Source: Octopus bimaculoides (taxonomy: Eukaryota). From it: a stretch of DNA of 60,934 bases. Both the position numbers and the translations under genes were made by a program. The notes beneath the pieces are model-generated. The model did no database searches, was not told the DNA's origin, and saw nothing but the letters and a program-made list of their open reading frames with translations. Positions 5,978-57,969 of this stretch are shown one piece after another; position 1 is the first letter of the stretch, and each line of letters starts with the position of its first letter. The stretch lies in NCBI RefSeq assembly GCF_001194135.2, contig NC_068984.1, forward strand, positions 33,630,185 through 33,691,118. The letters run 5' to 3'.

Positions 5978-6130
5978 GTGCGCGTGTATGTGTGGTAAGA
6001 AGCTTGCTTCCCTACCACATGATACTGATTCCTTCTGTGTTGCACCTTGGGCAAGTCTCTTCTATTTAGCTTGGGGTCGACCAAAGCCTTGGGAATGGAT
6101 TTGGAAGACGAAAACTGAAAGACGCCTTTA
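5978..6130 (+). mobile_element. tRNA-derived SINE (family A) with microsatellite tail
   Basis: tgtggtaagaagcttgcttccc...gcaccttgggcaagt...gaccaaagccttg...ggatttgg..gacgaaaactgaaaga. Homologous copies at 15391-15550(-), 44046-44120(+) and 57814-57969(-). Confidence 0.85.
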
Positions 6131-7739: not shown

Positions 7740-9989
7740 ATGCATGTACGCATGCACTACACGCACAAATACACACGTGCATGTAAATATTCTGCGTATG
7801 TCTGTGAAACTTTAATGAGTCACTTTAACGATTAACTTATGTATATAGCCTTCTGGATGTGTTTGTCAAGTAGTTCTTAGCTCGGAGAAAATGAAGTTGA
7901 ATGGTGGAATAACAACAGATGTTACTACAATTACGCCAATGGCGCCACCAATCAGTTACCCAAAGAAACAAGAAATGATTTCTATTTCTGTTAACTAATA
8001 ACTGCGAACATTACATTACAAATTGCATGCCTCAGTGAGAAAGCTGTGACTTAGTAAATTGTAGTTTAGTAAGTAAGCTGACACTAAGTTTACTCAAGCG
8101 ACAAACACTTAACGATTAAACATGAACTGATTTACACCTCAAGGAATCATTTCATCATCTACGTAATTAATTAATTACATCTACGTCAGACAGGTTTTCT
8201 TTATTTAAAATTATTGCCAAGTTTTCTGAAGAGTGTTGGTGTTACTTTTGTGTGGTACTAATTTCTATAACTCCCTACAGATTCAATGTGGGTTCGGTTT
8301 TTCAATGCTTCGAATCGTTTTTTGATATATTGCCGGTAATTTATTTTGATTAATGAACGGAATTGCTAACAGTATTATGTAGCAAAAGTGAGTACACACA
8401 CACACATCCACATATACTAAGAGAGATAGATAGATATCTGCATACATATATACGTATAAATAAAGTGAACTTAAATTCCTTATATATGTATATGCATACG
8501 CACATATGAGTGTGTATGTATATGAATGTATCTTTTACTCTTTTTATATTCTACTAAATGGTGGAAGAGAGAGAGAGAAATATTATTACATTGCAAATTA
8601 TGAATTAACAAATGTTTATTAGTTTGTTGCAATATTTATCAAGAGTAAACAGAATATAGTTAATGGTATGTACGAATGAAACTAACTGGTTGACGCTTAA
8701 AAGATTTTAAAATATCTCGAATTATTCGCAACTAATCCAAGCATTAGTTACATACAATAAACATTTAATTGCAGTAAGCCAGTTCCATGAAAATTAAATG
8801 AGTGTCAAAACATTCTCTTTCTGCTATTTATAAAAATGTAGTCGTAAACTGGATAATTCAATTAATGCTAAGATACTTGAATTACCCATCAAATTTGGAG
8901 TATGAGAACAAGAGTAGGAACTTATAATATCTGAAACTAAAAGAATTAAAAGCGAATTCGAAGCAAATTCATTTTCATGACTGTTCTATAACGCCTATAT
9001 ATATATATATATATATNNNNNNNNNNNNNNNNNNNNNNNNNNNNNNNNNNNNNNNNNNNNNNNNNNNNNNNNNNNNNNNNNNNNNNNNNNNNNNNNNNNN
9101 NNNNNNNNNNNNNNNNNNNNNNNNNNNNNNNNNNNNNNNNNNNNNNNNNNNNNNNNNNNNNNNNNNNNNNNNNNNNNNNNNNNNNNNNNNNNNNNNNNNN
9201 NNNNNNNNNNNNNNNNNNNNNNNNNNNNNNNNNNNNNNNNNNNNNNNNNNNNNNNNNNNNNNNNNNNNNNNNNNNNNNNNNNNNNNNNNNNNNNNNNNNN
9301 NNNNNNNNNNNNNNNNNNNNNNNNNNNNNNNNNNNNNNNNNNNNNNNNNNNNNNNNNNNNNNNNNNNNNNNNNNNNNNNNNNNNNNNNNNNNNNNNNNNN
9401 NNNNNNNNNNNNNNNNNNNNNNNNNNNNNNNNNNNNNNNNNNNNNNNNNNNNNNNNNNNNNNNNNNNNNNNNNNNNNNNNNNNNNNNNNNNNNNNNNNNN
9501 NNNNNNNNNNNNNNNNNNNNNNNNNNNNNNNNNNNNNNNNNNNNNNNNNNNNNNNNNNNNNNNNNNNNNNNNNNNNNNNNNNNNNNNNNNNNNNNNNNNN
9601 NNNNNNNNNNNNNNNNNNNNNNNNNNNNNNNNNNNNNNNNNNNNNNNNNNNNNNNNNNNNNNNNNNNNNNNNNNNNNNNNNNNNNNNNNNNNNNNNNNNN
9701 NNNNNNNNNNNNNNNNNNNNNNNNNNNNNNNNNNNNNNNNNNNNNNNNNNNNNNNNNNNNNNNNNNNNNNNNNNNNNNNNNNNNNNNNNNNNNNNNNNNN
9801 NNNNNNNNNNNNNNNNNNNNNNNNNNNNNNNNNNNNNNNNNNNNNNNNNNNNNNNNNNNNNNNNNNNNNNNNNNNNNNNNNNNNNNNNNNNNNNNNNNTT
9901 TTACGTTTCAAGGCTATTCACTTTAACAGAAAGGAATTAGAGAAAAAGAGAAAGAGATTTTTTTTTTTTTTAATTGTGAACTTAGCGAT

Positions 9990-10874: not shown

Positions 10875-11125
10875 TGTGGCAATAATTGAGGGGATTTCAC
10901 TCAGAGTGAGCCAACCATATCAAGTAGTTTCACCATAACATATATTCATTATTGTTACGCTGCCTTCTGCGCATCCGTGCTTATAATTGGCACTACTATG
11001 GTCACATGATCGACGTTTGAGCCTGATCACGCCATTTTTTGTCTCTGGTGTTACAGTGTAAGCATGGCCGCTCCATAAGCAATGTGCACCAAAGAAGAAC
11101 AAACAGCGGTGACCCGATTTCTCTT
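10875..11125 (+). mobile_element. mariner 5' end (TIR-like end, 5' UTR, transposase N-terminus)
   Basis: atggccgctcca...tgcaccaaagaagaacaaacagcggtgacccgatttctc translates to MAAP*AMCTKEEQTAVTRFL (mariner EQRAVIRFL-like). It is homologous to 11355-11575 in inverted orientation. Confidence 0.7.
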
Positions 11126-11129
11126 ATGC

Positions 11130-11575
11130 TATTTCACAAGAAATGAAACGTGTAAATTGCACTGTTGCTCGTACACCCTTATTCCAGGCCCTTTTGAAAT
11201 CAAAAAAGGGCTAGCATCACCTTTACCACGAAAGACCAAATCTTCAATTTCTTTGTCGATGGCTGTCCAGGATGTTTCCACTCTATACTTTGTCTTTTGC
11301 ATTCTGCCGCATAATGATGGACTTACGTTTCATCTCCTGTGAAATCAGATCAGAGAAATCGGATGACCTTTTTTAATTTTCTTTGGTGCCCAATGCTGAA
11401 AGAGTGGCCATGCTTACACTGTTAAGCCAGAAAGACAAATTGTACGATCAGGCTCAATCTTTGATCACGTGACCACAATAGTACCAACTTTAAGCACGTA
11501 TGGGCAGAAGGTAGTGCGACAATAATAAAGATATATTATGGAGGGAGTGCGGATAATTATTGAATTCCCCTCCTA
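11130..11575 (-). mobile_element. Internally deleted mariner (5' end plus catalytic-domain fragment)
   Basis: Minus strand gives TGDET*VHHYAAECKRQSIEWKHPGQPSTKKLK..GKVML (first D of the DDD triad, TGDETWVHHY...SMEWKH motif). TIR-like gaggggaattcaataattatccgc lies next to TA at about 11550-11575. Confidence 0.85.
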
Positions 11576-15320: not shown

Positions 15321-15390
15321 CACATAAATACTCTCACACATACACACACTCACACAGACACACAGGCACACACATACACATATACACGGT

Positions 15391-15550
15391 GGGCTCCTTC
15401 CAGCTTCCGTCCACCAAATCCATTCACAAGACTTTGGTCTGCCTGAGGCTATAGTAGAAGACACTTGGCCAATGTACCACACAATGAGACTGAACCCCGA
15501 ACCATGAGGTTGGGAAGCAAGCATCTTACCACACTGACATACCTGCACCT
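15391..15550 (-). mobile_element. tRNA-derived SINE (family A)
   Basis: Reverse complement aligns with 5978-6130 over its length. Confidence 0.85.
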
Positions 15551-16815
15551 GTGCACGCACACGTTTGTGTGTGAGTATATATATATATATATATATATAT
15601 NNNNNNNNNNNNNNNNNNNNNNNNNNNNNNNNNNNNNNNNNNNNNNNNNNNNNNNNNNNNNNNNNNNNNNNNNNNNNNNNNNNNNNNNNNNNNNNNNNNN
15701 NNNNNNNNNNNNNNNNNNNNNNNNNNNNNNNNNNNNNNNNNNNNNNNNNNNNNNNNNNNNNNNNNNNNNNNNNNNNNNNNNNNNNNNNNNNNNNNNNNNN
15801 NNNNNNNNNNNNNNNNNNNNNNNNNNNNNNNNNNNNNNNNNNNNNNNNNNNNNNNNNNNNNNNNNNNNNNNNNNNNNNNNNNNNNNNNNNNNNNNNNNNN
15901 NNNNNNNNNNNNNNNNNNNNNNNNNNNNNNNNNNNNNNNNNNNNNNNNNNNNNNNNNNNNNNNNNNNNNNNNNNNNNNNNNNNNNNNNNNNNNNNNNNNN
16001 NNNNNNNNNNNNNNNNNNNNNNNNNNNNNNNNNNNNNNNNNNNNNNNNNNNNNNNNNNNNNNNNNNNNNNNNNNNNNNNNNNNNNNNNNNNNNNNNNNNN
16101 NNNNNNNNNNNNNNNNNNNNNNNNNNNNNNNNNNNNNNNNNNNNNNNNNNNNNNNNNNNNNNNNNNNNNNNNNNNNNNNNNNNNNNNNNNNNNNNNNNNN
16201 NNNNNNNNNNNNNNNNNNNNNNNNNNNNNNNNNNNNNNNNNNNNNNNNNNNNNNNNNNNNNNNNNNNNNNNNNNNNNNNNNNNNNNNNNNNNNNNNNNNN
16301 NNNNNNNNNNNNNNNNNNNNNNNNNNNNNNNNNNNNNNNNNNNNNNNNNNNNNNNNNNNNNNNNNNNNNNNNNNNTATATATATATATATATATGCAATC
16401 TCTTACTATTTCTTAATACTATGATGCAACTATTTATTACGTAAATGCTTTATGAAGTGGAACTTTCATTGTAGGCAAGATAGAAATATCATATACAAAG
16501 CATATTACTTAATCGTTTTGTCATAAACCAATGTGCATATAGTTATATACATTAATTCAGTTTGTCATATAATACATAAATATATAATACATAAATATGT
16601 AACATACAGTGATATAATGGTTTCAAACACGCATAAGAAGATACAATTCATATTAATAACAGTTTTTCGTCATACCTATACACGAAAAGATACGGAAAAT
16701 CATGTAATATACTTAAGTGATCAATTTTTCATAATTACGAAAAACTGATATACATATATTCGTATATGATTGCGCACGTGTGTGTGTGTGTGCATGCGTG
16801 TGTGTGTGCATGTGG

Positions 16816-16866
<51 letters not shown>

Positions 16867-19474
16867 TGTGTCTGTGATAGAGAGATAGAGCGTATGTGAA
16901 TATGTTTTCGTCTGTTCTAATATACATTTGCAACTACTTAACGTATCCATCCAAACAAGGGTCTGTTAATAAGATTCTAACAAAAAGAACGAAATGTGCA
17001 GAAATTATAAGGAATTGCTAAGATCAGTTCATTTTGATCTGAATGTAAGATAAATAAGTAAAAAAATAAATAAGTAAATCTTCAATGCAGTTCAATTTGT
17101 ATGCCAGTCTGCGTCTAAATTAGATGATGAATTGATGAGGTAAATATATAAAAGTTACTAGAAATGGAAAGAAAATAAATTACTGCAAGAAAGAACTGAA
17201 AAGGTACAATATTTCCTTTAAATTACCCTATTGAGTGTTATTTTCGGAGTAGAATAGTCTCATAGCATTTCTAAGTTCTTAGATTTACAAATCATATTAG
17301 AGTTAACTATTCTGAAAATTTTCCACCGTTACGGCAATTTCTTGTTCTCTTAAAACACATTATCCTTTAAATTTACATATGTGTCTGTATGCGTAATTTC
17401 TGTATTTTTTTATTGTCTGTTATTCTTTTCAGGTTGTAGTTAATCATTCTCTGAGTATTTTTCATAAAATCTGCTTTCAACTGTGAAAATGCATTTGTAA
17501 AGGCCCACGATTCTATGAATTGATACTTATTTTCTGTGAATTTTTTCGAAATCAATTTTTTTTTACTTACCCTAAAATCTTCTTCCCTATTTCTTACATT
17601 TGTTTCTGTATTACATTAACAGAATTAGACTTCTCTCTCAGCCATCTCCCCATACTTTCTCTTCTTTCTGTGCTTCTATGTGTATTGTTCTCTATATCTG
17701 ATCATCAACTCTTATTGCGGGTGTGGTTTAACGTATTAAGCACACATTATACCGATATATAAGGAATGAAAAAACGAAGCTCACGCATAAGACACAAACT
17801 AATTTTTATTCTAAAAATGAAGACTGATAGAATTGTGTGATTTATCTTCAGCTGATCATTTAAATTATATATATATTTATTTAAAATTTTGTTTCTATTA
17901 GTTTGAAATTATTTTCTTATTTTGGTTATTTTTCTGAAAATTTCTTTCCTCGTTTCCTGTGTTGATAAGATTTCTTCGAAATATTTTCCAAAGTTATTTT
18001 TCGAAACGGTTTCTTTTTTAGTTTCTTTCTTTTTTTTTTCTGCTCATAGATCATGTTTCACTTTATCGAAGTTTCACAAATAATTAAATAAATACAAAAA
18101 TAAATAAAATTAAATATTTTCACAATAATTTTACACTAATCATTACAGTAAAAAAAAGAAAATGATGTACAATAAAGAAAATATGCTTCAATAAAGAAAA
18201 AAGTTATGTAACTAAATCTCTCGTCCAAAACGAAATAAAAACTCATTTACTATACGGTTTATTTTTTAGCCTCGTGTTTCTATCTCTCCTTCTTCAGCCT
18301 GTTTCTCTCTCTACCATTCTTTCTCCCTCTCTTTCTTTCTCTCTCTCTTTCTCGCTTTTCCTCTCCTCTTTGCGTATCTGCCTCTGTACCTTTGCCATTT
18401 TCCTTCCTCTCTTTATAATCTTAGCACTTTTTGTCTTTGATTTGCATTATTATTTATTTTACTGCATTTTATTGCGTTGCTAATTTCAAATGTTGAGAAA
18501 CTATTGCCAATAAAAATCAATGTTTGCATATTATTTTTGAGACATTATCAGTGTGTTATTTTAAAATCATGATCTCAAGGAGGGTGGAATGAGATACGTT
18601 AATTAAAATATAAAACTTAATTTAATTAATGTAATTTCCTGCACATGCTTTAAATACATATATTTAAACTTGGTAAAATATTTAGATTAAATATATACTT
18701 TTATGTTTAATTAAATTCTTACAATAATCGGAAACAGAATAATGATTTTGACCTATAATTTCAGAACGCAAAATTTGGAAATTAAATTTGAAATAGTTTC
18801 TTTTTTTATGTTATAGGAACTAGTGTTACTTCGAAGAATATTACTTAATGTGTAAATAGCTACTAGGAGAGTAGAACTGATGATGCATCAATTTAGCAGT
18901 AAACGCTATGACTCTGACTGCTATCGAATGGGCAAATATCATATTCAATGTTCCACACATATTAGCACATAAATATTCGTGGATATCTTATACTAGAATA
19001 ACTTCTTTTATAAAGATTATTTTTTTATATATATTTTTCAGTGATTAGAATTTTATATTTTGAACAAGATTGCAGGAACTAAAATACAGGAATGCTGTTT
19101 CACATCACGATGAAAAAAGAAATCTTGCTCAAATCAGCACCTACGAACTGCAAACATGTCTCAGTGAACGATGGAGCTCCAATAAACATACAACCTGCTA
19201 AAGATGATAGCCAATTCTCTCTCAATTACTTCTTAATTTTTATGAAATAAGTGAAAACATTAAAATATACACGAGCAAATTAAATATTTAAAGCTACGAG
19301 CAAACTAACTAAGGTTGCTAGAAATAACAGTAAAGGCATTGCTTAAACCAGTCGTTTTTTAGTCTAAAAATTCAAGAACGAAAGTTTGCAATACACTCTA
19401 GGATTTTATAAAATTAATTATCTTTGTCATATTTCCTCCAGATAAATTCGCGAAGATACAAGTCAAACATGTAA

Positions 19475-20319
19475 CTGTTCAGGTACCACCCTTCCTCGGT
19501 TGTATTTACGTTTTGAGTATACTGTTTCGTTCATCTCAATAACTCTTTCCAGATCACCTATTTGAACTGGGTTGTGGAGCAGCTTCTCTGCACAAAACTC
19601 ACAACATAATTGCTGTAATGAGCAGCTGTGCTCTGATTCATACCCAGTTCTTCTTTACAAAAACGTATTGAGGTAATTTCCTTGACACATACGTATGGAA
19701 GATGTATTGATCTCAGAGAAAGGGAGCAACTTTCCAACCATGTATCTTTTCGGAGAGACACAGACACATTGCAGACTCTCCGTTGCCCACACCAGTACAA
19801 ATTCCCACGAACTTTTTTTTTCTATGGTATATCCTTTCTTACAAACCTTCTGTTCTGGTATTATTCCTTTCTCTTGGAAGAAATATACTGCATCTTCTTC
19901 CATCAAACAGGAAAGGTTTTAAGCTGTAGCCATCTTGTCACTGTTCTAAAATCACTATACCATTCTCGAATCGAATTCCTACTGTTATGAAAACAAACAA
20001 TTATGGAACATGTGGTGGTTACACACTTTGTGCGCATGCGAAACATCTTCAGTTACTATGGAAACAGATTTCTTTGCTTACTGTGGTAACAGAACGTCAT
20101 GGTGATGTGTAAAATACTCGCTTCTGATTAGCTAAACTGCCCAAATTTTGCAAATTTTAATGGCTAATAACTTTTTAATTATATATTTATTGGGAAATTG
20201 ATTTTCCTTTTCTTAATTAGTGTACCAAACTTAATCTATATACTAAATTTGAAAACAACTGGAACAAATTTTGAGAATGCGATTCAAACGACAAAGATCC
20301 GAATTTTTTCGTATAAGCC
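19475..20319 (-). mobile_element. Merlin (IS1016/ISXO2-like) DNA transposon relic, 5' half
   Basis: Frameshifted minus-strand translation from ATG at 19933: MEEDAVYFFQEKGIIPEQKVCKKG...WCGQRRVCNVSVSLRKDTWLESCSLSLRSI...KEITSIRFCKEELGMN...EFCAEKLLHNPVQIGDLERVIEMNETVYSKRKYNRGRVVPEQ. This matches the Merlin hallmark QIGG....VEIDES.F.KRKYNRGR. A candidate GG-starting terminus (ggcttatacg) is at 20319. Confidence 0.8.
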
Positions 20320-20874
20320 AATACAGAAATGTTTTTTACCGATATCGTAATCATTCTAATATTGCACTCAACATATTAAATATTTTCCACTTGTTTTCCA
20401 GTATTCAGCACTAAGTATATCTTTAGCTCTGTAGCGGATACGAAAAATACCCACTCCCGTGCTGAACACTTCCCTCGTGCCCTTACACGTGGTTATCGTG
20501 TTAGGACTAATGGACACCCTACTAACAACGGCATGCAGTGTTTGAACTCTGCCACAGTCACCGGCATTTCTATCAACGTTTTCCCTCCTATCGTAGCTCA
20601 TTCGGTGGTCTCCCCCTTTAAACGCGGCGTGTGAACCAGAGTTCATCACTTAATCTACTTGTTCTTGACATAATCTACGTAACCCGATGTGAGTAGCAAG
20701 ATACTAACCAACCAACCAACCAACCAACCAACCAACCACCTGTCCACGCACAGTAACCCTACAAATTTATCTAGCCCTAATGCTAGAATAGGCACCAACT
20801 CAACAACGCTGGCTCGGGTTTTAACGCTTAGGGTTAAATTCATATGACTGATAGTGTCTAGCCTTAGGCGATAA

Positions 20875-20931
20875 AAGCCGCTGATGAAAATTAGTGTGTC
20901 AACACCAAGACTCGAAATTGTGATCCAGCTT
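20875..20931 (+). ncRNA. Type I hammerhead ribozyme, copy 1
   Basis: AAGCCG-CUGAUGA-[stem II with GUGU/ACAC hairpin]-GAAA-U-UGUG-A-UC^-CAGCUU. Stem I pairs 5 of 6, stem III is 2 bp, and the triplet is AUC with predicted cut after 20925. The base of stem II is partly mismatched. Confidence 0.6.
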
Positions 20932-21199
20932 CATACAATAGGGGCTTATCTCCCTTCGTCAATCATTGAGTTAGAGTGATTTGTGGCTTTAAAGTTAATT
21001 TAACTCTTACTTTAGCATAAACGGTGCTGGCCATCACCCTCCGTCACTTTTGTGGCATCTATTGATTTTGCCTTTAGGTTCTAATTGCTTATAAACGACT
21101 TTTTTATTCTTTGTTTACACTTACACCGCTTAGAAAATCAACATAAGTGTTAAACTTATATGATTGATAGAGGAAATTAAGTTTAACCTTAGGCGTTAA

Positions 21200-21256
21200 A
21201 AGCCGCTGATGAGAATTAATGTGTCAACACTAAAATTCGAAATCGGAGTCCGGCTT
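21200..21256 (+). ncRNA. Type I hammerhead ribozyme, copy 2
   Basis: AAGCCG-CUGAUGA-GAAUU...AAUUC-GAAA-U-CGGA-G-UC^-CGGCUU. Stem I is a perfect 6 bp, stem II has a 5-bp base, the core is intact, and the triplet is GUC with predicted cut after 21250. Confidence 0.75.
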
Positions 21257-21699
21257 CATACGATCGGGAGATACCTCCGTTCGTCAATCACTGAGTTAGA
21301 TTGATTTGTGGCTTTGGAGTTAATTTATCTCTTATTTTAGCATAAACGGTATTGGTCAGTACCCTCCATCACTTTTGAGATCTCTATTAAGTTTATACAA
21401 ACATAAACTTTTATATATAGCCCATTTTTTTTCTCTGTAAATTCTATGTGGCTTTCATTACTCCCTGACTGACTTTACCCCATTGTGAAAGTGTCCCAAT
21501 AATTTACCTTAGCTGTCTGGAACTTTAAGATGCCCACCTTATTTACTATTAGGGCGACATACACTCTAACTAATAAGTTCAGTGGTCATCTGATTTTGTG
21601 TTTTTTGTTTTCGTTTTTGTTTTCTTTTTCCAGCTTTCAATACTTGCAGTGGCTAGTTTGATAATTTGTTTTTTGTTTTTTTTAATCGAATATGGTGTG

Positions 21700-22250
21700 T
21701 TGAGTGTCCGTGCATACTTGCTGACAGATGTGAAAAGATACGATTCTCCAGATTCATTCCACCGACTAACAATGATTTCCCTGGATTTATTTATAGTCAT
21801 CGTAGAAGCTTATTATATTCAAACGGCAAACAATTTCGGTGTTATGCTGGAAATCAAACAGCTGTCACTAGCAAATTTTCCTGACACAGCTGTTACCCAC
21901 TGGACACAGTGCCCTTGTAAAGTGGCTTAATCCACGTTGAATTCTTCAGCAGGAAAATTTTGGGTGTTTCGACAATTTTCAGAAAATCGATTGAAGTATT
22001 GAAAACATAGTCTTCTAAATAGAACACGTCTACTAATTTGGAGCAATTTTCTCTCCAGGTAGCATTTCAAGTGTCATTCTGTTGTTTTCTCTCAAGTGAT
22101 ATTTCTTGGTGCTTGTAGAATTATTCACGATTACAAGGTATGGTGTACATGACTGGGAAAACCGACAAAGACTGGCAATCCTTTCAGCATAGTCAAATCT
22201 TTGTGACATTTCATGCAGATGTTTGTTACTACACGAAGAACTCTACGTAA
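21700..22250 (+). mobile_element. Heavily decayed Penelope-like RT domain
   Basis: Across frameshifts, YLLTDVKRYDS, EAYY/SNGKQF, GV...SLANF and QVIFLGACRIIHDYKV..LGKPTKTG follow the order of PLE RT motifs (LVSFDV.SLY, NYF.FNG, GVAMG..LANIF, ISFLDV, YRKPT.TG). Confidence 0.35.
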
Positions 22251-23126
22251 TGGGTTAACCCGCTAGCACGAGTCGTCAAATTGCAGTCAAATCGCATCTG
22301 CTGTCATATATTTTGCTGGGTAGCAAACAAATTTTAGAAATTCCTTTTGCTACCAGTGGTCTAGCGAGAAGAAAAAAACTAGTTAATAGACTATATATTA
22401 TTCCTATAAATACATACAGTGTATATTTAAACAAATAAGAGAGATGTCCATAATAGGACATCTAACCCTGACCGCTCCTTCTAGCGGGTTAGGAACATCA
22501 AATCTAAGTACTTTTGAAAGCATTTAATGTCTTGGCCGAAAAGTTTGTATTGTATGTAACAATTAGTATTCAAGTTTCTGTGATATGTGTCTATTTCTCG
22601 ATGATGTTCTGTTTTGCATTATTACAATCAGCAAAATAACTTATTAAGCAATATAAATAGGAAAATATGTAACTTCCATTTCGACGCATATATTGAACAG
22701 AGTCGCAACTCATTAAAACTACGAATTAACTGAAAGTGGTCACAAAATTATGGATCATGTGGACAATACTCAATATAATAAGAAAACAATATTATATGGC
22801 TCATAAACTTATAGCAAAGTAGATAATATAGAATAGCTCTCACTGACACTTGTATATTTCCTACATGAATAAACATAAGCTTTCACGAAAAGAAAGATAT
22901 TAATGCTCGCTACAAATTTTATTTAATACTGTATCTCAGAAATCCAACCACAGCTGATGTCAGACAGAGACAAGCATCCCAACGAAAGGCCGAGATTTAT
23001 ATGCAGCATTTTAACTTCCCCACAAGTAATACGCTCAATAACAGTACCTCACAAAAATGTTGCTCTATACGCTGGAGCTCAGAGAAACTTAAACAACTGA
23101 TAATTGTCTTGAGATTTACAATGATG

Positions 23127-23180
<54 letters not shown>

Positions 23181-23593: not shown

Positions 23594-24230
23594 ATTCTAC
23601 ATTACGATCGTGACCCGATATAGTTTATCAAGTGAGGCTGAAAGACGCAATAGTATTCCCACGAGAAGAGCACACTTTTCCGTGGATCATATCCATAATA
23701 TCTAGAGTAGAGTTTAAGCATCAACATTTAAATATATATCCCGAAAATATAGGTAGAAGGTAAAATACATAGCTACTAATTTCCCTGGCTCTATTCCTTC
23801 AAATTTCACTCTATATATGAAACACAGATTTTGAAACATAGTCTCAAGTAAACGAAAATTATTACCAACTTACAATATAAACAACCCCTAAGAACTACTC
23901 GTGACAATATTTACATTTGGAAGGTGAAAAGGAATTTCTGTCAAAAGTCGTCAATTTATTGAATGTGTCATGGTGGTATTAACATTACTCAGTAAATCAT
24001 TGAGAAGAAAGNNNNNNNNNNNNNNNNNNNNNNNNNNNNNNNNNNNNNNNNNNNNNNNNNNNNNNNNNNNNNNNNNNNNNNNNNNNNNNNNNNNNNNNNN
24101 NNNNNNNNNNNNNNNNNNNNNNNNNNNNNNNNNNNNNNNNNNNNNNNNNNNNNNNNNNNNNNNNNNNNNNNNNNNNNNNNNNNNNNNNNNNNNNNNNNNN
24201 NNNNNNNNNNNNNNNNNNNNNNNNNNNNNN

Positions 24231-33171: not shown

Positions 33172-33237
33172 ATATATATGATGTGTCGAAAACTACAGTA
33201 TAGAGAAATAACTTATATTTCGGCAATACGGGAGACA
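33172..33237 (+). repeat. Left arm of a perfect 66-bp inverted repeat
   Basis: atatatatgatgtgtcgaaaactacagtatagagaaataacttatatttcggcaatacgggagaca is the exact reverse complement of 35348-35413. Confidence 0.95.
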
Positions 33238-34525: not shown

Positions 34526-34991
34526 NNNNNNNNNNNNNNNNNNNNNNNNNNNNNNNNNNNNNNNNNNNNNNNNNNNNNNNNNNNNNNNNNNNNNNNNNNN
34601 NNNNNNNNNNNNNNNNNNNNNNNNNNNNNNNNNNNNNNNNNNNNNNNNNNNNNNNNNNNNNNNNNNNNNNNNNNNNNNNNNNNNNNNNNNNNNNNNNNNN
34701 NNNNNNNNNNNNNNNNNNNNNNNNNNNNNNNNNNNNNNNNNNNNNNNNNNNNNNNNNNNNNNNNNNNNNNNNNNNNNNNNNNNNNNNNNNNNNNNNNNNN
34801 NNNNNNNNNNNNNNNNNNNNNNNNNNNNNNNNNNNNNNNNNNNNNNNNNNNNNNNNNNNNNNNNNNNNNNNNNNNNNNNNNNNNNNNNNNNNNNNNNNNN
34901 NNNNNNNNNNNNNNNNNNNNNNNNNNNNNNNNNNNNNNNNNNNNNNNNNNNNNNNNNNNNNNNNNNNNNNNNNNNNNNNNNNNNNNNNNNN

Positions 34992-35347: not shown

Positions 35348-35413
35348 TGTCTCCCGTATTGCCGAAATATAAGTTATTTCTCTATACTGTAGTTTTCGAC
35401 ACATCATATATAT
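35348..35413 (-). repeat. Right arm of the perfect 66-bp inverted repeat
   Basis: Exact reverse complement of 33172-33237. Confidence 0.95.
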
Positions 35414-36969: not shown

Positions 36970-39699
36970 NNNNNNNNNNNNNNNNNNNNNNNNNNNNNNN
37001 NNNNNNNNNNNNNNNNNNNNNNNNNNNNNNNNNNNNNNNNNNNNNNNNNNNNNNNNNNNNNNNNNNNNNNNNNNNNNNNNNNNNNNNNNNNNNNNNNNNN
37101 NNNNNNNNNNNNNNNNNNNNNNNNNNNNNNNNNNNNNNNNNNNNNNNNNNNNNNNNNNNNNNNNNNNNNNNNNNNNNNNNNNNNNNNNNNNNNNNNNNNN
37201 NNNNNNNNNNNNNNNNNNNNNNNNNNNNNNNNNNNNNNNNNNNNNNNNNNNNNNNNNNNNNNNNNNNNNNNNNNNNNNNNNNNNNNNNNNNNNNNNNNNN
37301 NNNNNNNNNNNNNNNNNNNNNNNNNNNNNNNNNNNNATATATATATATGTATATATATATATAATTATACACAGTTTTAGAGAACACCATTGATGTCCTA
37401 ACGCTTATACGGTGGGAAGCATGAGTGTTGGTGCTAAACAAGAATGTGTGTGTTAAACACGGAAACAGAATGTATCTCTTTTTTCTTAAGGGCAATTTTT
37501 ATACTTATCTTCATTTGAAATAAGTACAAAAGCTGTAATTATTAGTCTCTCACGCTATATCATTATCGATGAGTGACGTACCTAAGTAAAATTTTTGAAA
37601 CATCAGTTAACCTTGTCCAAAACAACTCTAATCTAGCAAAACTACGTTAGCCTTATCTGCAACAGAACAAGTCGTCTCTGTCTGGATGTGTTTTGAACAG
37701 AAATGATACCTTTTCGTAATGGCGCAATGCAAAGGAATTAAACTCCAATTTTTGAAGTACATGCATCTAGCACCATTGTTTGAATTGAAAACTGGTTGAA
37801 CTATCAATTAACAAACGCTATATGGGTAACATGATTTCTCATGTAATATCAAGTTAAAAATCACTGCATATTACCAGCCTTAATAGATTCATTCCCCCCT
37901 CTTCAAGGAAAGTGCGATAATCGTCACTAAGGAACCCACATAAACTTTTAACCATAAATACATGCTTATGTCCAAGTAACTTTTGTTTTACCACACCTTT
38001 CTTTTGATAATCCTTGCTAATTTTGCAGTTACGAAAAAATGCTTCAATTTGTTGAAAATTCGTATACGATTATGAATGACACTTGTAGGTTGTGTTATCG
38101 GATAAACACTTCATTAAAATACATCATACTATCATCAAAATGATCCTGTAAACAAGAAAATTAAGTAAAACTGTAAGGCTTTAGCAGAATAAATACTTCC
38201 ATACCTTACATTAGGCATTGCTAAATTATGGCTGCGTTAACAATGTTTTGTGTTAGTGCTGTACTGTATTATATAATATATCTAGAGATAGATACATCGC
38301 CCGCATTATATGTGGTAAAATTTCATTGGCCACTGAGTACGCTTCATAACAGCTCTCCTAATTAGTGTTTCAAATTCCCAATTAATAACTTAAGAAATTA
38401 CTGTTGATGAATAGGTAAATAAAAAGCAATCATAGCTACGTGTAAGATTAATATTGCTTCAGAATTCACAAACTTATTGCAATGCTACACTGCTCAACAG
38501 AATGTATTAAGCGGTCTTTAACCAACGCTGTACGTGTAACCAGATATGAATACCATTTCTATATACTATCTTCGTTGACAAGAAAAGAGGACTAGATACA
38601 ATTCCATATTGGATTATTTCAGCAGGTGTCAGTATACGTTATATATGTAAATCTGTTTATATAATCTACCTAAGCTCGTAATACTGGTAGTTTAAGAGAA
38701 GTTATATAGTGGGAAGTGAAAGAGACTGCCGAGAATAAAAGTATATCGGTTGATCTTTAAGTTTATGCCCATGAATAGACTCTCTATGCCCAAAACACTT
38801 CGCATTTTTCTTCATGGAAAATGTAGGCAACAAAGTTATACATATACCCTATAGTAAAATATATATTGGAATGGGTTCAACCATCACTTATTTATAAATC
38901 GAACCAACTGCCAAGAATGAATTATATGTATGGATTAACATATCGTATTTATTTATGCCCTTATTAATGAATTATATATATAGATTAACTTATCATATTT
39001 ATTTATGTCCTTAGTATTTGTGATTTTATAAGTTTGTGTATAGGGAATAAAAGGTATTTAGCTGAAATAAAACCAGGTCCCTTCACCTTTTTCTATCCAC
39101 AAGGAATTGGGCTTAGAGAATAGATGTCTAAGTATATACACTATATGCTAAAATGTATGGATATATCTGGTGGCACAGCGTAGCTATTGGGTAATTACAT
39201 TTTTTGTATGGGCTATAAACAACGAATGAATACACAGACACGCATGTACAAACACAAATACACGCGCGCACACACATGCACACACACACACACACACACA
39301 TACACATTAACTATTACAAGGAAGATATTGGTAGTGCCTTCAAGGTTTCGTATCGCTCGTTTTCACAACCGTATGAAGACGAACAAACCAAAACTATGCA
39401 CCTAGATTCAATCTTTTCCTTGTAAAAGATAATAAACGTGTACCAATATACAAGAACAAAAATATATAGAAGTACACACACACACAACCACACACACAAA
39501 CACAACCACATACACACACTCACACACACAACCACACACATACGCACACACATATGCACACACGCATACGCACAATAATCGATTTAGTAAACAGAAGAGA
39601 GAATTGGTACAACCCTTTTGTTTGTACGATCATCATTTCGAGCCATCCTGCGATTGTCTGAAATCTTTAAACGAGATATAAGTAGTTACAATACTAGTC

Positions 39700-40491
39700 G
39701 GTAATATTCTGGGGGCACAATAGCATGGCTGTTCTATAAATATCTATGTTACTACATCTTAACCCCAGGGAAACTTTTGTTCCACCTGGTTTACGACACA
39801 ACGTATCCGGTATATTGTAAGTAAGGGACCGTCTCACTCCCTTCTAGCTTGGCAAGACCAGTAAGCCATGGTTTTTTGGGTCTTTACCCTTCTTCGGTAC
39901 TGGGCATCTGCCTGCTATATTATAGTGGGAAAAAAACGTCACCGTCTAGGATTGTTGCTAGTCATGTATGCCGCTTCTCTGTGTCAACTAGTCTTGCTAA
40001 ACCGGAGGGAATTCACACTGTTACAATAAACCGCACACAGGTTGTGTTTCTTTAACCGGCTGAAAAGACTTTTTTCGTTAGGTTAAAATGTGTTAAGATA
40101 GTTCTTTATAGAACACCCATGTTATAGTGGGAAAAGCACGTTACCGTCTTGTAATGTTACTACTTATATCTCTTTTAAAGATTTTAGAATTAGCTAAATG
40201 GCCCGTTATGAGATCAGCGACTGTTTGCGGCTTCTCTGTTTATATATTATGAGTAAAAACAATTCACTACCATCTCTAACAGGCAGATGGCCCTTACCGA
40301 TGAAGGGGAAAGATCAAGAAACCGTGAGCTACTACTCTTGCCAAGCTGGAGGAGAGAGATTCGCTCTCTTACAATATATCGGACACAGGTTGAGTGTCGT
40401 TAACTCACTGAAAAAAATATTTTCCTGTGGTTAAAATGTAGTAGCATAGTTCTTTATAGAACAGCCATCTTATAGTGGCCAAAAAACGTTA
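39700..40491. repeat. ~350-bp unit repeat: one inverted copy plus tandem copies (PLE pseudo-LTR-like)
   Basis: 39721-39912 is the reverse complement of about 40282-40473. atagtgg..aaaa.cgt recurs at about 39922, 40124 and 40472; ggttaaaatgt...atagttctttatagaac recurs at about 40080 and 40430. Confidence 0.85.
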
Positions 40492-52019: not shown

Positions 52020-52870
52020 TCGCAAGAAACCTTGGGATTCCGCTTTCTACATTTAATAGAGTGATTGTGCAATTCCCTAGAGAATGGAAGGAGTCCACAT
52101 CACCTCCCCGATGTCGACCATGGCCCTCTGACAGCACCCTTCGCTTTGTTAAGAGAAGTGTGGCGGATAATCCTCGTTGCTAGGCCTCTGACGGAGCATA
52201 GCAATTTGGTTGATGTCAGACCCAGAACAGATGTCAGGTATCTCCACAAACTATGCTACTATGACAGAACAGCAAGAAGGAAGCCATTTCTTCGATCAGC
52301 CAATATCAAACGGAGAAAAATTTGGGGCAGTGAGATGGTGGAGAGGCTACTAGCATTTTGGGACACTGTCATATTCTCTGATTAGTCCAGATTTGCTGTA
52401 TTGTCTCTCAGTGGTTGAGTGTGGGTCCGGAGATTCTGTGATCAAGAATAAGACGTGAAAAGATTGCAAACCAACAATGAAACACGGCAGCTATTCTGTG
52501 ATAGTCTGGAGCGCAATTTAAAGCAATATACCATCAGAGTTGGTTGAGTGTGAAGGGGAAACATATAGTCAGATAAATATGTGTCCATATTGCAGAAAGG
52601 AATCCTTCTATCCTCTCTAGCGATGAAATGATTAAAGAAGGCTAAAATGACCCTCACGGCTAAATGATTGATCGGAAGATAATGGCATTAAAAAGCTTTA
52701 TGGCCAAGCTAGTCGCCAGATATGAACGCTGGGGTATAATAGACTGGACACTTCGTAAAAAGAACAAGAAAGCATCCCCAAGGCCAGGTATTTTGAGATT
52801 ACTGAATGAAACTTGGCTAGAAATTGCTCGGGAGAATATTTGGAAAAATGTAAAGGACATGTCTACTAAA
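52020..52870 (+). mobile_element. Tc1 (DD34E-type) transposase pseudogene
   Basis: [10 protein letters not shown] (HTH), TARRKPFL, FWDTVIFSD*SRF, G*VWVRR, PTMKHGSYSVIVWSAI and WPS*SPDMN are Tc1 motifs in order. Confidence 0.9.
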
Positions 52871-56832: not shown

Positions 56833-57813
56833 TGTATGTATGTATGTATGTATGCATGTATATATATAATATAGGCATCGATAGAAGACATAAAATTCAT
56901 GTAATCGATACCCAATTTTCCTTTAAAACATCGGAGTACTTAAGGCAAATCTCTTAAAACCGTAAAAAGAATATATATGGGTGTACAAAATTACACAAAA
57001 ATACATAAAAAAACACATACAAATCATATGAACATATAAAAATGTGCATGAATATAAAACGAAAATATAAAATGGTATGCGAGTGCCTGAACTTGGTACA
57101 TCCGTGTTAGAAACAAGAAGGAAGATAGTTATAAATACATATACAATATGTGACAATATACATAATTAATTAAAAAATATTAAAAGTATTCCATGGCAGA
57201 GATAAAGTATAATACTCATCCTACGATCGTTTCGGGGTATATGTTACTGGGAGTAGATAAAGTATTCCTGTCCTTCTCGCATATACACAGTTCATTCATC
57301 AAGGAACGCATAATTGACTTAAAATTCGTTAGAATAGAGGAAATAGAAAAATAGAAAAAAACCTCATAAATATGTACAGTGTAGAAAGGACAAGACAGCA
57401 GATAACTCAAATAAATAAATATGAACTACAAGAGAGGTTGATTATATAATAGGGGGGAATCTATTAGTTTAAATTTTGTATACAAGTTAGCTATTTTTAA
57501 TAATTTAGATCGAAAATATTTAGAAGTTGAAAGGTATTTATGCCTACAAAATATCAGTGCTTCAGAGATCTTATTGAGTAGGAGTTTCCTATTACTGGAA
57601 GTTACATGTATGGATCGAAACAGTTTGATTCAAATTCCATGGTACTCCGATTTTCAAGCATGATGCTAATCTTCAGCTATTTTGAATTTGAATTTACAAT
57701 GGCGTGTGATTAGTAGAACACTTGAAACTCGGAGTATCAACGAATTGTTTTGATCCATATATATATATATATATANNNNNNNNNNNNATATATACATACA
57801 TATACATACATAC

Positions 57814-57969
57814 GAAGGTCTTCTCTGAGTTTCCGTCTACCAACTCCTCTCATAGGGCTTTGGTCAGTCCAAGGCTATAGTAGAAAACACTTGCTCAAGG
57901 CTTCACGCAATGCGACTGCACCCTGAACTATGTGGCGGGAAGCTAGCTTCTTACCACACAGCCACACCT
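57814..57969 (-). mobile_element. tRNA-derived SINE (family A)
   Basis: Reverse complement aligns with 5978-6130 and 15391-15550. Confidence 0.85.

What the first reader, a model, noticed from the sequence alone, without database searches (positions are those of the whole stretch)
20822..21392. Tandem 325-nt repeat with a type I hammerhead ribozyme in each copy (retrozyme-like, potential circRNA cassette)
Seen: two aligned copies 325 nt apart each contain, in order, AAGCCG, CUGAUGA, a hairpin stem II, GAAA, a 2-bp stem III with a 4-nt loop, a UC cleavage dinucleotide and CRGCUU. Copy 2 has a perfect 6-bp stem I, GAAUU/AAUUC closing stem II and a GUC triplet. Copy 1 keeps the core and has AUC, with stem III U-A where copy 2 has U-G. 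Established: minimal type I hammerheads with very short stem III occur in Penelope pseudo-LTRs, in newt satellite 2 and in metazoan non-LTR retrozymes, which are tandem units of a few hundred nt giving small circular RNAs. Inference: cleavage after 20925 and 21250 would excise a 325-nt monomer (20926-21250) that could be circularised, so this may be an uncharacterised cephalopod retrozyme or PLE-LTR family. Its stem II is longer than in the most minimal PLE hammerheads.
Basis: partly seen in the sequence, partly recalled or inferred. Interest (0 to 1): 0.85.

Follow-up and report, generated by a model that had tools for sequence, protein, structure and literature searches.

The report
Decayed hammerhead-ribozyme repeat (retrozyme relic)
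Two adjacent, roughly 80% identical copies of a non-coding repeat sit 325 bases apart; the second carries a complete self-cleaving hammerhead ribozyme motif and the first a mutated one, so this looks like an old, largely inert insertion of a known kind of small circular-RNA retroelement and not a working cassette.

Summary
Two direct copies (20830-21069 and 21146-21394) are 79% identical, and their hammerhead motifs lie 325 nt apart. The array is only about 1.75 units, and Tandem Repeats Finder does not call it.

- **Copy 2 (21200-21256)** has a complete type I hammerhead: the full catalytic core, a 6/6 stem I, a G-C-closed stem II, a 2-bp stem III and a GUC site. A motif this complete appeared in 0 of 1000 simulated windows.
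- **Copy 1 (20875-20931)** keeps the core but has a C·A mismatch in stem I and two A·C mismatches in stem II, one of them at 10.1-11.1. Its hammerhead fold costs +0.8 kcal/mol, against -6.3 for copy 2. No covariance model or descriptor finds it.
- **Rfam:** nothing reaches a gathering score. Copy 2 scores 16 bits against Hammerhead_HH9, whose threshold is 52.
- **Context:** no reverse transcriptase or GIY-YIG coding remnant lies within 2.2 kb, no other copy is in the window, and there is no target-site duplication.
- **Decay:** the differences between the copies look neutral (29 transitions, 14 transversions).

Verdict: a decayed dimer of a metazoan non-LTR retrozyme-type (Penelope-associated) repeat. 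It is a new member of a known kind. Release of a 325-nt circle from this locus is unlikely. The claimed cephalopod origin could not be checked.

The parts
20830..21069 (+). Repeat copy 1, the homologous block. It is non-coding, 40% GC, and retains 6 CpG.
   Evidence: Local alignment to 21146-21394 at 79% identity. The repeat finder family D1 has a spacing of 325.
21070..21145 (+). 3' part of unit 1, the spacer between the two blocks. It has no detectable counterpart after copy 2.
   Evidence: Alignment of 21070-21146 against 21395-21520 is no better than shuffles (p=0.30). No other match in the window.
21146..21394 (+). Repeat copy 2. It is truncated relative to a 325-nt unit, has a 9-nt insertion at 21171-21179, is 37% GC and retains 10 CpG.
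20875..20931 (+). Hammerhead-derived motif of copy 1, degenerate. The core is intact (CUGAUGA 20881-20887, GAAA 20914-20917, U16.1-C17 at 20924-20925). Stem I has a C·A mismatch (20927). Stem II has A·C at 10.1-11.1 (20888/20913) and a second A·C (20890/20911). The nominal cleavage site is 20925|20926.
   Evidence: Direct reading. Pair list and +0.8 kcal/mol for the hammerhead structure. No descriptor hit. No Rfam hammerhead hit at E<=10. The MFE fold is not hammerhead-like, z=-0.6.
21194..21262 (+). Complete type I hammerhead motif of copy 2.
- Outer stem I: CGU/ACG, with a 3x3 internal loop.
- Stem I: AAGCCG/CGGCUU (21200-21205 / 21251-21256).
- Core: CUGAUGA at 21206-21212.
- Stem II (21213-21238): 5 bp, a 3x3 internal loop, 3 bp and a UCAA loop.
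- GAAA at 21239-21242.
- Stem III: A-U and U-G pairs with a CGGA loop.
- GUC site, with predicted cleavage at 21250|21251.
   Evidence: The descriptor hits only here, with 0 of 1000 simulated windows. Rfam Hammerhead_HH9 gives 16.1 bits, E=0.65, with all core positions aligned. The MFE contains stems I and II, z=-3.5 and -3.1. The hammerhead structure scores -6.3 kcal/mol.
20926..21250 (+). Nominal 325-nt monomer between the two C17 positions. It would be released only if both ribozymes cut.
   Evidence: Coordinates. The + strand fold gives -74.1 kcal/mol, z=-2.0; the - strand gives z=-0.5.
20815..20880 (+). Hairpin inside the unit, just 5' of hammerhead 1 (arms 20815-20838 and 20857-20880). 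The right arm includes the 5' strand of stem I, so it could form a competing conformer.
   Evidence: Inverted repeat I1, 24 nt and 88% complementary to the copy-2 arm 21182-21205. The hairpin forms in the MFE of 20810-20940.
21144..21191 (+). The equivalent hairpin 5' of hammerhead 2. Here it stops short of stem I and coexists with the hammerhead fold.
   Evidence: MFE and centroid of 21126-21265.

Best explanation
This is an old, decaying insertion of about 1.75 units of a short non-autonomous retroelement that carries a type I hammerhead ribozyme. It belongs to the class described in animals as hammerhead satellite DNA / non-LTR retrozymes, which recent work derives from the pseudo-LTRs of Penelope-like elements.

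How the family works is taken from the literature and not shown here:
1. Tandem units are transcribed.
2. Each hammerhead cuts after C17, releasing unit-length RNA with 5'-OH and 2',3'-cyclic phosphate ends.
3. An RtcB-type tRNA ligase circularises that RNA.
4. A retroelement reverse transcriptase supplied in trans copies the circle and re-inserts it as tandem multimers.

At this locus only the downstream ribozyme (21200-21256, predicted cut at 21250|21251) still has everything needed to fold. The upstream one (20875-20931) keeps the 13 core bases, but point mutations have broken the closing pair of stem II, a second stem II pair and one stem I pair. A transcript would therefore be cut at most once, and the 325-nt monomer would be released poorly or not at all.

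What is shown: the repeat, the motif anatomy, its statistical significance, the damage in copy 1, and the absence of coding sequence nearby.
What is inferred: the retrozyme life cycle, the ancestral activity, and that copy 2 is closer to the ancestor.
For: - **Repeat:** 325-nt offset, 79% identity.
- **Copy 2:** it satisfies a full hammerhead descriptor that 0 of 1000 simulated windows satisfy. Every core position aligns to Rfam Hammerhead_HH9. The fold z-scores are -3.5 and -3.1, with stems I and II in the MFE plus a 3-bp outer stem I beyond a 3x3 internal loop.
- **Copy 1:** pairs CA, AC and AC sit at helix positions. The hammerhead structure costs +0.8 kcal/mol against -6.3 for copy 2. There is no CM hit and no descriptor hit.
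- **Neutral decay:** 43 differences, 29 transitions and 14 transversions. Copy 1 has lost CpGs, 6 against 10. The hammerhead has 10 differences in 57 nt, about the same as the 18% of the rest of the unit.
- **Non-autonomous:** no Pfam domain appears in any of six frames across 18600-23130. There is no ORF over 150 aa free of N in the window, and the longest open frame in the repeat is 77 aa.
- **Class features** match published descriptions (PMC7229834; bioRxiv 10.64898/2026.07.22.740005): period 150-450 bp, GC below 45-50%, a type I hammerhead, and a 2-bp stem III with a tetraloop as in invertebrate retrozymes.
Against: - No hit reaches any Rfam gathering score.
- Only one locus is available, so multi-copy family status, conservation of the hammerhead across copies and covariation are all untested. 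Scans of metagenome, viral and prokaryote collections gave only two 21-nt chance matches.
- There is no target-site duplication.
- The array is too short and too diverged for TRF.
- There is no sequence similarity to published mussel, coral or axolotl retrozymes.
- Stem II is 26 nt with an internal loop, which is unusually long, and the stem III loop of copy 2 is not palindromic. Neither the monomeric tertiary-contact mode nor the dimeric mode can be asserted.
- No expression data are available.
Confidence: 0.7

Rival explanations
1. One reading: an active circRNA cassette. Both hammerheads cut, the 325-nt RNA 20926-21250 is released and then ligated into a circle.
For: - Both copies keep all core nucleotides and a valid NUH site.
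- The stem III segment of copy 1, AUUGUGAU, is self-complementary if G-U pairs are allowed. A dimeric hammerhead of the kind known from newt, axolotl and Penelope-like motifs could in principle rescue it (direct reading; PMC7229834).
- The + strand monomer folds somewhat better than shuffles, z=-2.0.
Against: - Copy 1 has an A·C at the 10.1-11.1 closing pair, a second A·C in stem II and a C·A in stem I. Its hammerhead fold costs +0.8 kcal/mol, and dimerisation through stem III does not repair stems I and II.
- No CM or descriptor hit for copy 1.
- 18% divergence with a neutral spectrum.
- The published operational criterion, two consecutive units with complete hammerhead motifs inside a TRF-called repeat, is not met.
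Confidence: 0.08
2. A remnant of a Penelope-like element proper: two pseudo-LTR pieces left after the RT/GIY-YIG ORF was lost or 5'-truncated, not a free-standing retrozyme.
For: - Canonical Penelope-like elements carry hammerheads in their pseudo-LTRs and insert as partial tandems, often near microsatellites (PMC8557442). An (AACC)8 tract lies 90 nt upstream.
- Retrozymes and pseudo-LTRs are phylogenetically intermingled in Xenopus, so the two readings overlap.
Against: - No RT or GIY-YIG signal appears in any frame within 2.2 kb on either side or as a sizeable ORF anywhere in the window.
- The two copies are directly adjacent, with nothing ORF-sized between them.
- The hammerhead is not of the minimal Penelope type, which has a 1-bp stem III, a palindromic tetraloop and short stems. 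It has a long stem II, an extended stem I with an internal loop, and a non-palindromic loop III in copy 2.
Confidence: 0.12
3. A chance hammerhead-like motif inside an ordinary local tandem duplication of non-coding DNA, with no ribozyme ancestry.
For: - Rfam gives no curated-threshold hit.
- The bare core pattern is expected 0.6 times per window by chance.
- Only one locus was seen, and a first-stage reader scanning many windows will meet rare chance motifs.
- The two copies count as a single independent observation.
Against: - The full motif occurred in 0 of 1000 simulated windows: core, 6/6 stem I and 4/4 closing pairs of stem II.
- Features that were not used in the search are also present. 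These are G10.1-C11.1, a fifth stem II pair, a 3-bp outer stem I after an internal loop, and a strongly non-random fold, z=-3.1 to -3.5.
- It lies in a low-GC repeat of about 325 nt, which is the typical setting of animal type I hammerheads (PMC7229834).
Confidence: 0.07

Closest known systems
Metazoan non-LTR retrozymes / hammerhead satellite repeats (newt satellite 2, axolotl Rtz_331/353, Mytilus Mg353, Acropora Amil224; Cervera & de la Peña 2020, PMC7229834)
   Same: - A type I hammerhead on one strand of a non-coding, low-GC repeat whose period (325 nt) falls inside the 150-450 nt range.
- A dimer-sized array, the smallest size class reported.
- A 2-bp stem III capped by a tetraloop, as described for invertebrate retrozyme hammerheads.
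- No LTR, PBS, PPT or ORF.
   Different: - No primary-sequence similarity to the published mussel, coral or axolotl units.
- Stem II is much longer: 26 nt, made of 5 bp, a 3x3 internal loop, 3 bp and a tetraloop.
- Only one of the two ribozymes is structurally intact.
- Copy number, expression and circularity are unknown.
- It is not detected by TRF or by Rfam thresholds.
Minimal hammerheads of Penelope-like element pseudo-LTRs (Cervera & de la Peña 2014; Lünse et al. 2017, both recalled from memory; context in PMC8557442)
   Same: Type I topology with a very short stem III, an association with a partial tandem arrangement, and a microsatellite nearby.
   Different: - No RT/GIY-YIG ORF is adjacent.
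- Stems I and II are long and carry internal loops.
- Loop III of copy 2 (CGGA) is not palindromic, so the dimer mode typical of these motifs is not evident.
Rfam Hammerhead_HH9 (RF02275) and Hammerhead_1 (RF00163), clan CL00010
   Same: Copy 2 aligns end to end with the HH9 model (positions 1-77), with every core nucleotide matched, both stem I segments and stem II.
   Different: The score is 16.1 bits against a gathering score of 52. There is a 15-nt insertion in stem II and non-canonical pairs in stem III and the outer stem I. HH9 members are single-copy conserved intronic motifs of amniotes, not repeats. Copy 1 does not match at all.
Schistosoma Sm-alpha SINE-like hammerhead repeats (recalled from memory)
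   Same: A non-coding unit of about 330 nt with a type I hammerhead and a short stem III, found both tandem and dispersed.
   Different: No tRNA-like part (ARAGORN finds none) and no convincing Pol III A/B boxes were found. Family membership by sequence was not testable.

Membership tests
Hammerhead ribozyme, type I | Conserved catalytic core C3-U4-G5-A6-N7-G8-A9 ... G12-A13-A14 ... A15.1-U16.1-H17 | tested here: met
   Both copies: CTGATGA, GAAA and TC at 20881-20925 and 21206-21250. There are no differences between the copies at core positions.
Hammerhead ribozyme, type I | Three helices around the core: stem I open, stems II and III hairpin-closed, 10.1-11.1 paired | tested here: met
   Met for copy 2 only: stem I 6/6, stem II G-C closed with 5+3 bp, stem III 2 bp. 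Copy 1 does not meet it: A·C at 10.1-11.1, a second A·C, a C·A in stem I, and +0.8 kcal/mol.
Hammerhead ribozyme, type I | Covariance-model score at or above Rfam's gathering threshold | tested here: not met
   No hits at gathering score in the window. The best is HH9 at 16.1 bits against 52 for copy 2. Nothing for copy 1.
Hammerhead ribozyme, type I | Tertiary contact between loop 1 (an internal loop in stem I) and loop 2 | tested here: inconclusive
   Copy 2 has a 3x3 internal loop 6 bp up stem I and a 3x3 internal loop 5 bp up stem II. That geometry is compatible with a contact, but no conserved contact nucleotides could be checked.
Hammerhead ribozyme, type I | Site-specific self-cleavage after H17 | not testable with these tools
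   Needs an in vitro transcription and cleavage assay.
Metazoan non-LTR retrozyme | Tandem repeat of 150-450 bp units, low GC, no LTR/PBS/PPT and no ORF | tested here: met
   The period is 325 nt, GC is 37-40%, and there is no domain or long ORF. Caveat: only about 1.75 units are present, and TRF does not call the array.
Metazoan non-LTR retrozyme | At least two consecutive units each with a complete hammerhead (the operational criterion for an active retrozyme, bioRxiv 10.64898/2026.07.22.740005) | tested here: not met
   Only copy 2 is complete. The criterion is quoted.
Metazoan non-LTR retrozyme | Multi-copy family dispersed in the genome as monomers, dimers and multimers | not testable with these tools
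   No second locus exists in the 61-kb window. The source genome is not in any searchable collection.
Metazoan non-LTR retrozyme | Expressed as unit-length linear and circular RNA | not testable with these tools
   No transcriptome data are available.
Penelope-like element (pseudo-LTR) | Repeat flanks or adjoins an ORF with PLE-type RT and GIY-YIG endonuclease | tested here: not met
   Six-frame Pfam scan of 18600-23130 found no domain. No candidate ORF exists elsewhere in the window.
Penelope-like element (pseudo-LTR) | Minimal hammerhead: 1-bp stem III with a palindromic tetraloop that acts as a dimer | tested here: not met
   Copy 2 has A-U and U-G pairs with a CGGA loop, which is not self-complementary. 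Copy 1's AUUGUGAU is self-complementary only through G-U pairs (direct reading).

The most novel reading that the evidence does not exclude
Its hammerhead would use an unusually long stem II, with an internal loop 5 bp from the core replacing the usual terminal loop 2 as the partner of the stem I internal loop. Intact tandem copies elsewhere in the genome would produce circular RNAs of about 325 nt.
Probability: 0.25. Interest if true: 0.45.

Novelty: new member of a known kind. Interest (0 to 1): 0.25.

Why it matters
Type I hammerheads in short tandem repeats are the signature of animal retrozymes, a ribozyme-based route to small circular RNAs that is distinct from back-splicing and is now linked to Penelope-like elements.

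A new family in an unsampled lineage would add a data point on their patchy distribution, and it would add a hammerhead variant with an extended stem II. This particular locus is a mutated relic, however. Its value is as a query sequence for finding intact relatives in the source genome, not as a functional element.

Tried and rejected
- **Rfam at gathering thresholds on the whole window:** nothing found. Permissive searches gave one weak HH9 hit for copy 2 and none for copy 1. Weak snoRNA and miRNA hits in the repeat were judged to be chance.
- **Relatives elsewhere:** two metagenome scans, one viral scan and one prokaryote-genome scan with conserved 21-25-mers. Only two metagenome contigs matched, and they share nothing beyond the 21-mer, so they were rejected as chance.
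- **Identifying the organism:**
  - Two protein-database searches, one with a Tc1-like ORF and one with an ORF from an interspersed repeat, returned no hits.
  - Two exact-protein look-ups were not on record.
  - ARAGORN found no tRNAs.
  - 'Cephalopod' therefore stays unverified.
- **A longer array:** the tails and heads beyond the homologous blocks are not significantly similar.
- **Target-site duplication:** the longest shared word at the two ends is 7 nt, p=0.24.
- **Penelope-like ORF remnants nearby:** none.
- **Similarity to published retrozyme units:** none.
- **Bacterial-type promoter/terminator scan:** uninformative for a eukaryote.
- **Translating the repeat to fish for other copies among predicted proteins:** rejected because the open frames are too short.

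Full report
**What is in the sequence**

The window is a draft eukaryotic assembly with 15 runs of N totalling 5593 bases, 66% A+T, and many (TA)n and (CA)n tracts at gap edges.

At the reported place there are two direct copies of a non-coding segment, 20830-21069 and 21146-21394. They are 79% identical over 281 aligned columns with one 9-nt indel, and they are offset by 325 nt across the ribozyme region.

The 76 nt between them (21070-21145) have no significant counterpart downstream of copy 2 (p=0.30 against shuffles). The sequence upstream of copy 1 does not match that spacer either (p=0.54). The array is therefore about 1.75 units, not a clean multimer, and Tandem Repeats Finder does not report it. 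No further copy exists in the window. The nearest assembly gaps are several kb away, at 15601-16375 and 24012-24230, so the array is not cut by a gap.

**The hammerhead motifs**

Copy 2 reads AAGCCG / CUGAUGA / GAAUU-AAU-GUG-UCAA-CAC-UAA-AAUUC / GAAA / U-CGGA-G / UC / CGGCUU.
- It has the full catalytic core, a G10.1-C11.1 closing pair, a perfect 6-bp stem I, a 2-bp stem III (A15.1-U16.1 and U-G) with a tetraloop, and a GUC site. Predicted cleavage is at 21250|21251.
- In a 140-nt context the minimum-free-energy fold contains stems I and II. It also contains a 3-bp outer extension of stem I beyond a 3x3 internal loop, the usual shape of natural type I hammerheads (z=-3.1, 0 of 200 shuffles as good).

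I wrote a descriptor requiring the core, at least 5 of 6 stem I pairs, 4 of 4 closing pairs of stem II, a paired base of stem III and UH.
- It hits only 21200-21256 on either strand of the window.
- It hit none of 1000 first-order Markov windows of the same size and composition.
- The bare core pattern alone is not significant, with 0.6 hits expected per window.

**Copy 1 is damaged**

Copy 1 has the same 13 core bases and an AUC site. Its helix pairs read A-U, A-U, G-C, C-G, C·A, G-C for stem I and A·C, A-U, A·C, U-A, U-G for the base of stem II.
- The canonical hammerhead secondary structure costs +0.8 kcal/mol in copy 1, against -6.3 kcal/mol in copy 2.
- Its own MFE fold is unrelated to a hammerhead, z=-0.6.
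- It fails even the loosest descriptor.
- Searched on its own against Rfam at E<=10, it matches no hammerhead family.
- The outer stem I extension is also broken in copy 1 (direct reading).

The 10.1-11.1 pair is one of the most constrained features of the ribozyme (established knowledge), so copy 1 is very probably inactive. Its stem III segment AUUGUGAU could pair with a second molecule through G-U pairs, but that would not repair stems I and II.

**Covariance models**

- No Rfam family reaches its gathering score anywhere in the window.
- In a permissive search of 20700-21500, copy 2 aligns end to end with Hammerhead_HH9 (RF02275, a type I family of the hammerhead clan). All core positions match, but the score is only 16.1 bits against a threshold of 52, E=0.65 over 4227 families.
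- The score is depressed by a 15-nt insertion in stem II and by the minimal stem III.
Taken with the descriptor statistics, I read it as a real but atypical or decayed hammerhead, not as a chance motif.

**Pattern of divergence**

The two copies differ at 43 aligned positions, 29 transitions and 14 transversions. Copy 1 retains 6 CpG and copy 2 retains 10.

The hammerhead segment has 10 differences in 57 nt (17.5%), the same as the rest of the unit, while the core has none. At 18% divergence, a core with no differences has a chance probability of about 5-8% (my arithmetic). That is not evidence for constraint since the duplication.

All five differences that break a helix pair lie on copy 1, and none lie on copy 2. 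This suggests copy 2 is closer to the ancestor. It cannot be read as selection, because the locus was noticed precisely because copy 2 looks intact.

The best-conserved stretch is not the ribozyme. It is 20957-21025, paired with 21282-21350, with 6 differences in about 70 nt.

**Context**

- No Pfam domain appears in any of the six frames across 18600-23130.
- The window has no ORF over 150 aa free of N.
- The longest open frame touching the repeat is 77 aa.
- No tRNA-like sequence was found, and there is no target-site duplication.
- An (AACC)8 tract lies 90 nt upstream.
- Each unit has a hairpin just 5' of the ribozyme. In copy 1 it overlaps the 5' strand of stem I, and in copy 2 it coexists with the hammerhead.
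- The nominal 325-nt monomer folds modestly better than shuffles on the + strand (z=-2.0) and not on the - strand (z=-0.5).

**Comparison with what is known**

Animal type I hammerheads typically lie in low-GC tandem repeats of 150-450 bp. [quoted passage not shown] Invertebrate versions have a 2-bp stem III with a tetraloop and cleave as monomers. Amphibian versions have a weaker stem III with a palindromic loop and need dimers. Circularisation is attributed to an RtcB-type ligase (PMC7229834).

A 2026 preprint places these retrozymes as non-autonomous derivatives of Penelope-like pseudo-LTRs. It defines an active retrozyme operationally as a TRF-detected repeat with at least two consecutive complete hammerheads (10.64898/2026.07.22.740005).

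The present locus matches the class in period, composition, ribozyme type, stem III form and lack of coding capacity, but it fails that activity criterion. It shows no sequence similarity to the published mussel, coral or axolotl units, which is usual between distant hosts.

Cephalopod genomes are already known to contain Penelope-like elements (PMC8557442). One was reported to contain 235 Rfam Hammerhead_1 loci (PMC6962438). If the window is cephalopod, a hammerhead there is therefore not new in itself, although I found no open paper that characterises cephalopod retrozymes.

**What could not be done**

I could not establish the organism. I could not retrieve any related locus: the only matches in public collections were two 21-nt chance matches. 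Copy number, conservation and covariation across family members, the link to a specific Penelope-like element, expression and cleavage all remain open.

**Verdict**

- The best explanation is a decayed dimer-sized insertion of a retrozyme-type hammerhead repeat. One ribozyme motif is structurally intact and one is crippled.
- It is a new member of a known kind, of low to moderate interest.
- The active-cassette reading is unlikely for this locus.
- A chance motif is unlikely given the completeness of copy 2 and its setting.

Noticed in passing
window 20957-21025 and 21282-21350: The best-conserved part of the repeat is not the ribozyme. It is a stretch of about 70 nt, 32-100 nt downstream of the cleavage site, with 6 differences against 18% overall. 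It gives weak sub-threshold Rfam hits to the C/D snoRNA family snoMe28S-Am2634 (22.5 and 18.1 bits against a threshold of 50), probably by chance.
   Followed up: partly
window 20815-20880 and 21144-21191: A hairpin inside the unit lies immediately 5' of each hammerhead. In copy 1 its right arm includes the 5' strand of stem I, so it could be an alternative, inactive conformer. In copy 2 the hairpin and the hammerhead fold side by side.
   Followed up: partly
window 20706-20738: A perfect (AACC)8 microsatellite lies about 90 nt upstream of the repeat. Penelope-like elements are reported to favour microsatellite targets, but the link here is speculative.
   Followed up: no
window 20875-20931 vs 21200-21256: All five helix-breaking differences between the two hammerheads, including the outer stem I, are on copy 1 and none are on copy 2. 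Copy 2 also keeps more CpG, 10 against 6. The asymmetry is unexplained. Copy 2 may be closer to the source sequence, or this may be ascertainment bias.
   Followed up: partly
window 5990-6121, 15368-15544, 57794-57969: Three copies, about 76% identical and in mixed orientation, of an unidentified interspersed repeat. ORFs across it found no homologues in the protein database.
   Followed up: partly
window 10933-11151 / 11325-11541 and 39657-40491: An inverted pair of about 220 nt (78% identical) and a cluster of direct and inverted repeats of 160-210 nt. Their nature is unknown.
   Followed up: no
window 33172-33237 and 35348-35413: A 66-nt inverted pair, 100% identical, brackets the assembly gap 34526-34991. 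It may be an assembly artefact or a young inverted duplication.
   Followed up: no
window 52065-52385: A degenerate Tc1/mariner transposase remnant (Pfam HTH_Tnp_Tc3_2, E=2.6e-4, below the curated cut-off). It has no homologues in the protein database.
   Followed up: partly
window, 15 gaps (e.g. 1201-1790, 9017-9898, 15601-16375): Most assembly gaps are flanked by (TA)n or (CA)n tracts, so microsatellites evidently broke the assembly. The window is 66% A+T with a CpG observed/expected ratio of 0.76.
   Followed up: no
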